64,000 bases of DNA from Salisapilia sapeloensis CBS 127946 (Eukaryota > Protista > Oomycota). The stretch lies in contig JAADVB010000076.1 in the NCBI GenBank assembly GCA_023334545.1, positions 1 to 64,000 on the forward strand, written 5' to 3'. The position numbers and the translations under genes were made by a program. The notes under the pieces were generated by a model. That model worked only from the letters and a program-made list of their open reading frames with translations, ran no database searches and was not told the origin of the DNA. The first letter of the stretch is position 1, and every line of letters begins with the position of its first letter. Below, in pieces: positions 36,780 through 41,081 of the stretch.

Positions 36780-38266
36780 GACTGGAGAACGAGGGCTGTA
36801 TCAAGAGATAGAGCAAACGGACAAGTCTGGTAGGGATACGTTCCTCTAGAAGAATCAAGCAGGAATGCAAGGGTTTGTTTCTAGCCGGAAAGGAACAAGA
36901 CAGGGAGCAAAATCGACAGTGGAAGGTAGCTCGGAAGATGCCACCCGCTCGTTCAGCTCTTTGTTGTCTGCCGGTGGATATTGATGCGCATTTAACACAT
37001 CGTACTTTATTGGAGAAACGAAAAGAATATCGACGTCTCTTTCGAGTCTACACGACGCGGATACCTAGTGTCTATAGACTCTTTACCGCTTGTAATTGCA
37101 TGCGAGTAGAACGTGATACGAAGACCAAACCTTTCTTTTGATGGTCTTTAGTGATTATGCATCGCGGCAAGATCGATGCCACCTATGGTTTGAAGTTCAT
37201 GTTGAAGAGATGCAAACAAATCCTGAAATTTCCATAGCGTTGCAAATTGGATGAGAGATAGATGTGTGATAGTACTTCATCCTACATTAACAAGGCCTGT
37301 TTTCCAAATCTCTTCAGCCGCCTTTATCATTATCAGCGCCTAACTCTTCAACCCAGCTACATTTAAAGGTAAAGTCAATCTCTACACAGGCTACCAAAGT
37401 TACTTCAAGCTCGACGAAAGTTTAATCAATAGATAGTTGCTTACCTCAATGCACCAAAGTAAAATGGAGAATGAACCATATACTTGCAATACTACCTGCT
37501 GTGATTCGATGCCATCGAGTTCTCAAAACATAACCAAGCAAATGCGTCGCCAAGAAATTAGCTTGACTTTGAGCTTATACTGGAAAACAACAGGGTTACT
37601 GCTTTCATGCGTGCGTACAGTGAAATCCCAATAGAAGGTCGAAGCCTTTTTCTACAATCGGTGCTAGCGGCATAAAACGACGAACGAAACCAGCCCCTTG
37701 TTTTCGACCGGAGCTCATGCTTCAGTCATTTCAATCTGAAGCAAACAATTTTCCGATGTCTTTGTGACTCCCAAACGTTACGAGGGTATAATTTCAGTCA
37801 AGACGCAATCTCACTCAGAATCTGGATGGACCAAGACGCAAGTTTTTAAATGTATCAGATTTATAAGTGTAATCCTAGATCAAGTAAATGACATATAATT
37901 ATATTCATAAATATAAGTAGTTTATTATAGTTATTTTTCACAACTACTTAAGCTAACTTCTCTCAATGCCCCCTTCATTTCTGCATCCACTCGTAGCCAT
38001 GAATATTTGCTTGCGAACTGTGAGATATTCCAGATACTAGGACTTAAACACCTTTAAGTGAATGCAAGCTGTAGAGTGCTTCAGATGACTTGTCAACTCC
38101 TAACCCACCTGCAGGGCATTTAACATTTATAGGCATACACGCAAATTTTCGCAGCAAACGTGAAGACGTAGTAAAGTAGCTTGCTCATTCGCACAAGCCG
38201 TAAGGTCAAGTATGATGCAAGTCTCATTGCAAGCAACAACCAATGAAACCTTTGATTCGTTTTCAA

Positions 38267-40247
38267 TTAAGTTTCCAACACGCTGCCATCTTTCATCATC
38301 TTGCGCAACATGAAGACGATCTGCACTGCGGTCGGTCTCTCCTTCGGTTCGAAATTCAGGCACTTGTCTACGAGCTCTCGCATGGCCTCCGGACAATTCT
38401 CGGAGACATTTGGCTTGATCGAGCGACAGGCTACGCGATGCATGAGTGCAAAGTCCGAAAGATTGGTGCCTTCTTGGTCTTTGACATCGTGTAGTGGTAG
38501 CTCATGCGTGTCCAGCTCGGTCAGGATGGCACCGAACGAGTATAAATCACAAGTGTGATCGTACGACTCACTAGTTACCAGTTCTGGTGCAAGCCACTAC
38601 GTCATGAAGTATTAGATTCGTTAGTAAGGAAATGGAGAAACTAGTATGAGATAGCTGTATTTACCCGAGCAGTTCCGATGTCTTGAGTAACCATGGCGTT
38701 ATTCTCCGACATGAGACGAGCGCCACCAAAGTCACTCACTTTCGCAACCATGTCCTCCGATAGCAAAACATTTCGAGACTGAAGGTCGCCATGGACGACA
38801 GAAGATTCAAAAGACTGAACGTACACTAGCGCTTCAGCAATGTCGATCGCGATGCTAAGCTTCTCTTTAGTCCAATGGCGAGGTACCATAGATCGCTTCA
38901 AGTAATTCCGCAGGTTTCCTTTCGACATGTATTCAAAGAGCGCCTGGAAATCGACCTTCATTGTCCACGCGACACCGATGCACTTGATAATGTTCCTATG
39001 ATCAAGTGTTGCCACCAGCCTGACTTCATCAACCAACTTTTCGAACGCCGTGGGGTCAACGACGTGCTGTGCCAACCTTTTGGAAGCGTAGTAAGCATTG
39101 TTGTATGTAACTAGCCAAACAACTCCAAAAGTTCCGGAGCCAAGCACCTTCACGTCCTGGATACCCGTGAAATCCAGCCTTTTCCCAACAAGCTCTTTGT
39201 CACTCCACAGATCATAGACATGATCGCTAGTCAATGGGTCTCTCATGCTGGCAAAGGACATTGATTGAGTAAACGATTCGGTTATTGTCATGGATGCATC
39301 TCGAGTGTAGTCTCCTTCCTTCACAAGCTTTTTTGTTATCAATGCCGACTTGTACCGACGTACGTACCAGGATCCAGCTAAAGCTAGAACGACAAGCGCC
39401 ACGACAATTGGAATGACGATACCGAGTATGCTCGGTCCACCGTCTTCATCAGCACCATCTCGAACATTGCCAACAATTGAGCCTTGGTAGTTTAATGCCG
39501 AGTCCGATGGAATGGGATCGACGTTTTTGCTCTCATAATACTCGTCCGAGCCACTATAAAATTTATCATCCGACTCGCTGTCAGAATCGTCATACGAGTC
39601 ACTGCCAGCATCCTCTTCTGAGTCGCTATCGACAATATCATCTGAATCACTGTCAGAGTCCTCTTCCGAGTCACTATCAGAATCATCGTATGAATCACTG
39701 TCAGAATCCTCTCCCAAGTCTCTATGTAGATCTCTTGACCAGCTTGGTGGAAGAAAAGCACTCTGTAACAACCTCACACGGACATCATGCGGATCATTGT
39801 AGTCCAGGAAAATCTCGCTCCATTCGTCCTCTACATACCAAAGCAATGGAAGTTGTCAGTTATAATGCAAACAGCAGGTAGAAGTGGATCAATACCTGGC
39901 AGGCTCAAGAGACCACTACGCACTCCACTCTCGTAAAATTCGCTGCATAAGTGATGATAGGCATTCTGGAGCTTCTTCAGATTTAAGTATCCAAACCGCT
40001 GCGAATCAAATTCGCAGTCTGGAAGCTCTTTATTCAAATCCTGGTACGTTTCAAAGCACAAATTAGAGCAGCTGTAGTCCAGGGTAAGATAATTCACGCA
40101 GTTCATGCCATCTGGCTGTACTTCGTCCCATTCTTTGATAAGGTCATTCGATTGCAACGTGTCATCTCCAGTACAAGGTGCGCTTTGCACATTTGACAAA
40201 AGAAATGCGCTTAATAGCACGATGAGGAGAAAAGTCGGTCGAATCAT
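38267..40247 (-). CDS. Receptor-like TKL protein kinase: signal peptide, elicitin-like 6-Cys domain, Ser-Asp repeat stalk, TM, kinase (introns 39831..39895 and 38597..38664)
   Basis: Signal peptide MIRPTFLLIVLLSAFLLSNVQS; C..C..CxxxC..PDC..C; TM GIVIPIVVALVVLALAGSWYV; GSGTFG, ASKRL, HGDLQSRN, DFG, GTAR|WLAPE, DLYSFG, ERPTA. Both introns restore the frame. Confidence 0.9.
39535..39718 (-). repeat. Degenerate 24-nt (8-aa, xxDSDSDS) tandem repeat in the kinase ectodomain stalk
   Basis: GEDSDSDS YDDSDSDS EEDSDSDS DDIVDSDS EEDAGSDS YDDSDSES DDKFYSGS; DNA units resemble tcactgtcagaatcctctcccaag / tcactatcagaatcatcgtatgaa. Confidence 0.85.
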
Positions 40248-41081
40248 GGCAGGCAAAGGTTTAATTTGCATACGAGTCTCGTCGTGGTGAACTTTCATGG
40301 TTTGAGTACAATCACCCCAGGGAAGCGAATATTCTAATTTCACAATCTTAACTTGGTAACTTCGTTATCGCAAGGAAGAGAAATCCTAGATATCGAGGAT
40401 ATCCGCGGAAAAGGTAGCTTTGCCAGTCAGTGGAAATTAAAAAAATGATTTGGTTCGTTTCATCTTTCCGGACGATCTTCTATCCGTTGACTGCGTGCGA
40501 CACAATGGGCTTCACGACAAATCTTTATCTACTATAAGCTCGACCGGATGTGACTTTGATGCCTCCAAGTCGAAATCGAAAGATACGTCTTCTATGTATT
40601 ATTAATTGAAGCGATGATGCTTATAAGAACAGTATGGAAATCTAGGACGGGAAAATATAGACATAGAAAGGTTATAAGAGATGAGCACGTATGACTCTGC
40701 GCCCTTGTACTCTATGAACTTGACTTTCGGATGAAACATTTAGATCAGCGACGCAAATACTAAAGCATGTATCGCTACATTATGCGCCAAGAAAGAGTCA
40801 TCGACAGAATATATGCACTTCAGCAAAGTTCTGACATGGTGTGGGTACGAAGACAACTTCAAAAACAGCGAAAGCGCATTATGGAAATGATAGAATAGAT
40901 TCGTAGGAGATAGACGATAAAGTACAGGCAAGACAATTTTCTGCGAGCACAAGAGATCCCTTCTCTAAAAACTTAAAGCACTAAATTCTAATTTTAATTT
41001 CATAGTTCCGATCTAGGAATAGATGTCGTTTGAATAAGCTGATGTCTGGGCATCACTAGGCGCCAAGGGAGTTATACTTTG

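What the first reader, a model, noticed from the sequence alone, without database searches (positions are those of the whole stretch)
38267..40247. Receptor kinase with an elicitin-like ectodomain: candidate direct sterol/lipid sensor
Seen: after splicing, signal peptide - about 80-aa domain with six Cys (APC..., MNC, CSNLC, LPDC, HHLC) - acidic stalk - TM - TKL kinase. The order, including CxxxC and P-D/N-C, parallels the elicitin fold, but the Cys2-Cys3 spacing is shorter (omega-loop region reduced). Known: elicitins are oomycete sterol/fatty-acid carriers, and many oomycetes are sterol auxotrophs. I recall that elicitin-plus-kinase transcripts were noted in Aphanomyces and that a separate receptor kinase cooperates with elicitins in Phytophthora sterol sensing, so the architecture may not be wholly new, but I know of no functional study of such a fusion. 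Inference: a one-component lipid-sensing receptor.
Basis: partly seen in the sequence, partly recalled or inferred. Interest (0 to 1): 0.72.

Follow-up and report, generated by a model that had tools for sequence, protein, structure and literature searches.

The report
Oomycete receptor kinase, orphan six-cysteine ectodomain
This is a real, expressed oomycete gene for a membrane receptor kinase with a small six-cysteine outer domain, but no test could show that this domain is an elicitin, so the sterol-sensor idea remains a guess.

Summary
A three-exon minus-strand gene (40247..38267) encodes signal peptide, a 77-aa six-Cys domain, a 61-aa Asp/Ser acidic stalk, one TM helix and a TKL kinase. 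Contigs from four public runs (one study) skip exactly the two predicted GT..AG introns, so exon 1 is joined to the kinase exons.

The elicitin reading is unproven:
- Pfam gives no family for exon 1, even at E<=10.
- An exhaustive phmmer search of 1.84 billion proteins, a word search, the PDB and a metagenome scan found no relative.
- The two AlphaFold models are unusable (pLDDT 38 and 50).
- A weak protein-atlas hint to elicitins disappears once the signal peptide is removed.
- In favour: four of five Cys gaps lie within one residue of cryptogein's. The C2-C3 stretch, which holds the omega loop and Tyr47, is 10 residues instead of 24.

The kinase nests inside the oomycete LRR receptor-kinase family on a long branch and has HGDLQSRN where all relatives have HRD[LV]KSRN. 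A genuine Pfam-passing elicitin-TM-kinase fusion is already public (Pythium insidiosum KAJ0398139.1), but it arose separately. None of the papers I searched discusses such a fusion.

The scan flagged this gene type at least eight more times elsewhere in this genome, and three were followed up with similar verdicts. Direct sterol sensing has no support here. Interest is modest.

The parts
38223..40382 (-). Transcribed unit as seen in assembled contigs. One of the four contigs reaches 40508.
   Evidence: table 8: four contigs, no mismatches, both introns skipped
39896..40247 (-). Exon 1 coding part (117 codons plus 1 base). A possible alternative start is the in-frame AUG at 40298.
40182..40247 (-). 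Signal peptide, 22 aa, with predicted cleavage after VQS.
   Evidence: read from the sequence; no predictor was run
39945..40175 (-). Six-Cys domain, from C25 to C101 (77 aa). Cys-to-Cys gaps are 25, 10, 4, 14 and 23.
   Evidence: No Pfam family. No homologue found.
39831..39895 (-). Intron 1, 65 nt, GT..AG, phase 1.
   Evidence: table 5
38665..39830 (-). Exon 2: linker, acidic stalk, TM helix, juxtamembrane region, and the kinase N-lobe through the activation loop.
39529..39711 (-). Acidic Asp/Ser-rich stalk (61 aa: 22 D, 8 E, 19 S), encoded by a 24/48-nt tandem repeat.
39361..39429 (-). Single transmembrane helix (23 aa), followed by RRYK.
   Evidence: read from the sequence
38665..39165 (-). 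Kinase domain, N-terminal part: G-loop LGSGTFG, the Lys of ASK, HGDLQSRN, and DFG.
   Evidence: (PF07714 4e-27)
38770..38793 (-). Catalytic loop HGDLQSRN. Relatives have HRDLKSRN.
38597..38664 (-). Intron 2, 68 nt, GT..AG, phase 0, lying between GTAR and WLAPE.
   Evidence: table 5
38267..38596 (-). Exon 3: kinase C-lobe (WLAPE onward) and the stop codon.
   Evidence: (PF00069 9.5e-16)

Best explanation
The gene encodes a type-I, single-pass receptor-like kinase of the oomycete TKL family whose other members mostly carry leucine-rich-repeat ectodomains. In this lineage the LRR ectodomain has been replaced by a small disulfide-stabilised six-Cys domain. That domain is held away from the membrane by a roughly 55-aa linker and a 61-aa poly-acidic Asp/Ser repeat stalk.

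Shown: the exon structure, the splicing, presence in transcript-like contigs, the domain order, the kinase family placement and the divergent catalytic loop.

Inferred: the six-Cys domain binds an unknown extracellular ligand or partner protein, and binding is relayed through the TM helix to a non-RD kinase. That kinase keeps the G-loop, the ATP-binding Lys, the alphaC Glu, the catalytic Asp and Asn, DFG and APE, but has Gly for the RD Arg and Gln for the catalytic-loop Lys.

The origin of the six-Cys domain is unresolved. I put about 35% on a strongly reduced elicitin-like domain, about 10% on a remnant of the LRR-kinase N-terminal Cys cap, and the rest on a lineage-specific fold. Direct sterol sensing is possible but unsupported.
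For: - Gene model and splice.
- Kinase: Pfam.
- Nearest relatives: they are 44-53% identical over the kinase and are oomycete LRR-type receptor kinases from Globisporangium, Pythium insidiosum, Phytophthora and Nothophytophthora.
- Tree: our kinase sits inside that family (100/100 against plant CERK1-type outgroups). It groups at 97/83 with LRR-type members P0021, P0018, P0020, P0003, P0004 and P0050. Its branch length is 1.48 against a median of 0.23.
- LRR status of that clade: their upstream exons carry an 8-Cys cap and LRRs.
- Ectodomain swapping is real in this family: P. insidiosum P0051 has Pfam Elicitin + TM + kinase, and its neighbour has TGase_elicitor + kinase. P0051 groups with P. 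insidiosum LRR kinases (98/96), not with ours.
- Orphan status of the six-Cys domain.
Against: - The Cys gaps (25, 10, 4, 14, 23) track cryptogein's (24, 24, 5, 15, 24) in four of five places, which a uniform null gives about 2e-4 of the time. C27, C51 and C56 of cryptogein come from the printed alignment; C3, C71 and C95 are from my memory of the 1BEO literature.
- A global alignment to the Pfam-validated elicitin-like domain of P0051 beats shuffles (z 2.9, or z 2.0 with Cys fixed). 'Orphan' may therefore only mean a very diverged elicitin-like domain.
- The organism's own proteins are absent from the databases: there was no self-hit. The lack of homologues is therefore partly a coverage gap, and the paralogues noted by the scan could not be fetched.
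- No ligand, localisation or kinase activity was tested.
- The Lys-to-Gln change may mean low or no catalysis.
Confidence: 0.6

Rival explanations
1. The six-Cys domain is a reduced elicitin-like domain that binds a sterol or other lipid itself. The protein would then be a one-component lipid-sensing receptor kinase, a cis version of the SSRK1-plus-elicitin pair.
For: - All six Cys map in order onto the elicitin pattern, with four of five gaps within 1.
- MAFFT aligns the domain end to end with the elicitin-like domain of P0051, with one roughly 14-residue deletion between C2 and C3.
- The global alignment has z 2.9.
- With the signal peptide included, the two nearest Atlas clusters are Elicitin (0.77 and 0.76).
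- Elicitin + TM + kinase exists in P. insidiosum in the same kinase family.
- SSRK1, an LRR kinase of this broad family, senses sterol together with elicitins (PMC11551405).
Against: - There is no PF00964 hit at E<=10.
- BLASTP against the P0051 elicitin-like domain gives E=13.
- No elicitin appears in the PDB search at E<=10, while P0051 does find cryptogein.
- The Atlas signal vanishes without the signal peptide and was below the lead threshold anyway.
- Even with P0051 in the alignment, AlphaFold gives pLDDT 50 and Foldseek finds no elicitin.
- The missing 14 residues are the omega-loop/Tyr47 region that forms the mouth of the sterol cavity in cryptogein (established structural knowledge; not tested here).
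- Published work already doubts that elicitin-like proteins bind sterols (PMC3090399).
- The kinase is not sister to the P. insidiosum fusion.
Confidence: 0.08
2. The six-Cys domain is what is left of the N-terminal Cys-rich cap of an ancestral LRR receptor kinase, after the LRRs and the C-terminal cap were deleted and the remainder diverged.
For: - The kinase nests among LRR-type kinases.
- Their first exon encodes a conserved 8-Cys cap with C-x10-C-x3-C and the motif (Q/T)(L/F)(T/S)xSCGGxC, followed later by FGSYES. Ours has C-x9-C-x3-C with TLDYSCSNLC, followed later by EFYES.
- hhalign of the cap profile against exon 1 aligns 29 columns across these motifs with P 0.0088.
- Local alignments to three of the five caps have z 1.9-2.5.
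Against: - The hhalign probability is only 4.6%.
- Only three or four of the Cys can be matched, so disulfide partners would be lost.
- The overall sizes and Cys counts differ: 8 Cys in about 45 aa against 6 Cys in 77 aa.
- Global alignments are not better than shuffles.
- The short motifs could be chance.
Confidence: 0.1
3. The kinase is catalytically weak or dead, and the protein works as a co-receptor, scaffold or decoy for another receptor kinase rather than as a signalling enzyme of its own.
For: - The catalytic loop is HGDLQSRN. All of about 40 family relatives inspected have HRDLKSRN, with one HRDVKSRN.
- The kinase branch is very long.
Against: - The G-loop, ATP-binding Lys, alphaC Glu, catalytic Asp and Asn, DFG and APE are all kept.
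- An Arg sits four residues after the catalytic Asp, as in tyrosine kinases that lack the loop Lys. This is an inference from known kinase motifs.
- The gene is intact and present in transcript-like contigs.
Confidence: 0.2

Closest known systems
Oomycete LRR receptor-like kinases (the PsRLK family of Phytophthora sojae, including SSRK1/PsRLK12; PMC8254037, PMC11551405)
   Same: Both have a signal peptide, a single TM helix, a juxtamembrane LW(N/S)D motif and a TKL kinase. The kinases are 44-53% identical, and ours sits phylogenetically inside the family.
   Different: Ours has no LRRs, no 8-Cys N-cap and no C-terminal LRR cap. Instead it has a six-Cys domain and an acidic repeat stalk. Its catalytic loop is HGDLQSRN rather than HRDLKSRN. 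It also has an extra intron inside the kinase.
Pythium insidiosum KAJ0398139.1 / KAJ0399447.1 (P0051/P0064): elicitin + TM + kinase
   Same: Both have a small six-Cys ectodomain starting with APC, then a short spacer, a TM helix and a kinase of the same family. The kinases are 48% identical.
   Different: Its ectodomain passes Pfam Elicitin (32-36 bits) and finds cryptogein in the PDB, whereas ours does neither. It has no acidic stalk and has a canonical HRDLKSRN loop. Its kinase groups with P. insidiosum LRR kinases, so the two architectures arose separately.
Elicitins and elicitin-like proteins (PF00964; cryptogein 1BEO/1LRI)
   Same: Both are oomycete-specific, secreted, have six Cys in the same order, and share four of five gaps within one residue. 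Some elicitin-like proteins also carry Ser/Thr-rich or acidic C-terminal extensions (PMC3090399).
   Different: There is no detectable sequence similarity. The C2-C3 gap is 10 instead of 24, so the omega-loop region is absent. The fold is unverified. Ours is membrane-tethered to a kinase rather than soluble or GPI-anchored.

Membership tests
Elicitin (Pfam PF00964) | Match to the family profile at or above the gathering score (25 bits) | tested here: not met
   there are no families for exon 1 at E<=10. The positive control P0051 scores 31.9-35.6 bits over model positions 2-88.
Elicitin (Pfam PF00964) | Six Cys with the family spacing (cryptogein C3, C27, C51, C56, C71, C95) | tested here: inconclusive
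   Our gaps are 25, 10, 4, 14 and 23, against 24, 24, 5, 15 and 24. Four of five are within 1, while C2-C3 is 14 shorter. Elicitin-like proteins vary; P0051 has 17, 23, 5, 16 and 20.
Elicitin (Pfam PF00964) | Elicitin fold: helices plus beta-hairpin and omega loop around a hydrophobic cavity, with disulfides C1-C5, C2-C4 and C3-C6 | tested here: inconclusive
   AlphaFold gave pLDDT 38 (single sequence) and 50 (two-row alignment with P0051). Foldseek against the PDB gave no hit with E<=0.001 and no elicitin in the 50 rows shown. No homologues were available to build a real alignment.
Elicitin (Pfam PF00964) | Binds sterols or fatty acids | not testable with these tools
   This needs the purified ectodomain and a dehydroergosterol or fatty-acid binding assay.
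Eukaryotic protein kinase, TKL group | Match to the Pkinase / PK_Tyr_Ser-Thr profiles | tested here: met
   exon 2 matches PF07714 at 4e-27 and PF00069 at 5.2e-24. Exon 3 matches PF00069 at 9.5e-16. Together they cover profile positions 3-258.
Eukaryotic protein kinase, TKL group | Canonical catalytic residues (G-loop, VAIK Lys, alphaC Glu, HRD, catalytic-loop Lys and Asn, DFG, APE) | tested here: inconclusive
   All are present except the RD Arg (Gly) and the loop Lys (Gln): HGDLQSRN. Relatives have HRDLKSRN. Activity is untested.
Oomycete LRR receptor-like kinase family | Kinase domain falls inside the family clade | tested here: met
   the family separates 100/100 from plant outgroups, and ours lies inside it, grouped at 97/83 with LRR-type members. 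The branch is long, so the exact position is unsure.
Oomycete LRR receptor-like kinase family | Leucine-rich-repeat ectodomain with N- and C-terminal Cys caps | tested here: not met
   There is no LRR Pfam hit on exon 1 or exon 2. The cap profile against exon 1 gives hhalign probability 4.6%.

The most novel reading that the evidence does not exclude
The six-Cys module is a minimal elicitin-derived lipid-binding domain without the omega loop, fused in cis to a kinase of the SSRK1 family. One polypeptide would then do what Phytophthora does with a secreted elicitin plus a receptor kinase. The several paralogues in this genome would be a lineage-specific family of one-component lipid sensors.
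Probability: 0.07. Interest if true: 0.7.

Novelty: new variant of a known kind. Interest (0 to 1): 0.35.

Why it matters
Oomycetes have hundreds of transmembrane kinases whose ligands are almost all unknown. The only deorphanised case is SSRK1, which senses host sterol together with secreted elicitins.

This gene shows that the LRR-kinase chassis can carry a quite different, small Cys-knotted head. Together with the P. insidiosum elicitin-kinase and TGase-elicitor-kinase genes, it suggests that oomycetes repeatedly reuse their own secreted-protein domains as receptor ectodomains. Neither fusion appeared in the papers my six searches returned.

If the head proved to be an elicitin derivative that binds lipid, it would offer a simple one-protein system for studying sterol perception. 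As it stands, it is one more orphan receptor kinase.

Tried and rejected
- **Pfam on exon 1 at E<=10:** nothing.
- **Word search with exon 1:** 14 candidates, none scoring.
- **Exhaustive phmmer of the mature domain against 1.84 billion representatives:** four hits, all artefacts of repeat proteins. They were WD40 repeats with KVWDLAQPDGSQCV resembling our KEWDEVQPDGMNCV, Big_13 and FctA.
- **PDB sequence search:** only chance rows.
- **Metagenome scan with exon 1:** 157 pattern matches, none confirmed.
- **tblastn of the three exons against the window:** no paralogue nearby.
- **Protein atlas:** Elicitin clusters came top only when the signal peptide was included, and at sub-threshold scores. 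Without the signal peptide the top hit was a giant-virus hypothetical protein.
- **AlphaFold single sequence and two-row alignment:** both low confidence. Foldseek returned only generic helical proteins. I did not run the other fold libraries on such a model.
- **First word search with whole exon 2:** it was swamped by the Asp/Ser repeat words. Repeating it on residues 196-388 gave the useful list.
- **Nearest tree neighbour P0021:** its locus is an ordinary LRR kinase.
- **Exact look-up of a neighbouring mitochondrial-carrier protein, to name the organism:** not on record.
- **Findings search by sequence:** blank.
- **Literature:** six searches found no paper that describes an elicitin-kinase fusion. 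The Aphanomyces paper does not mention one.
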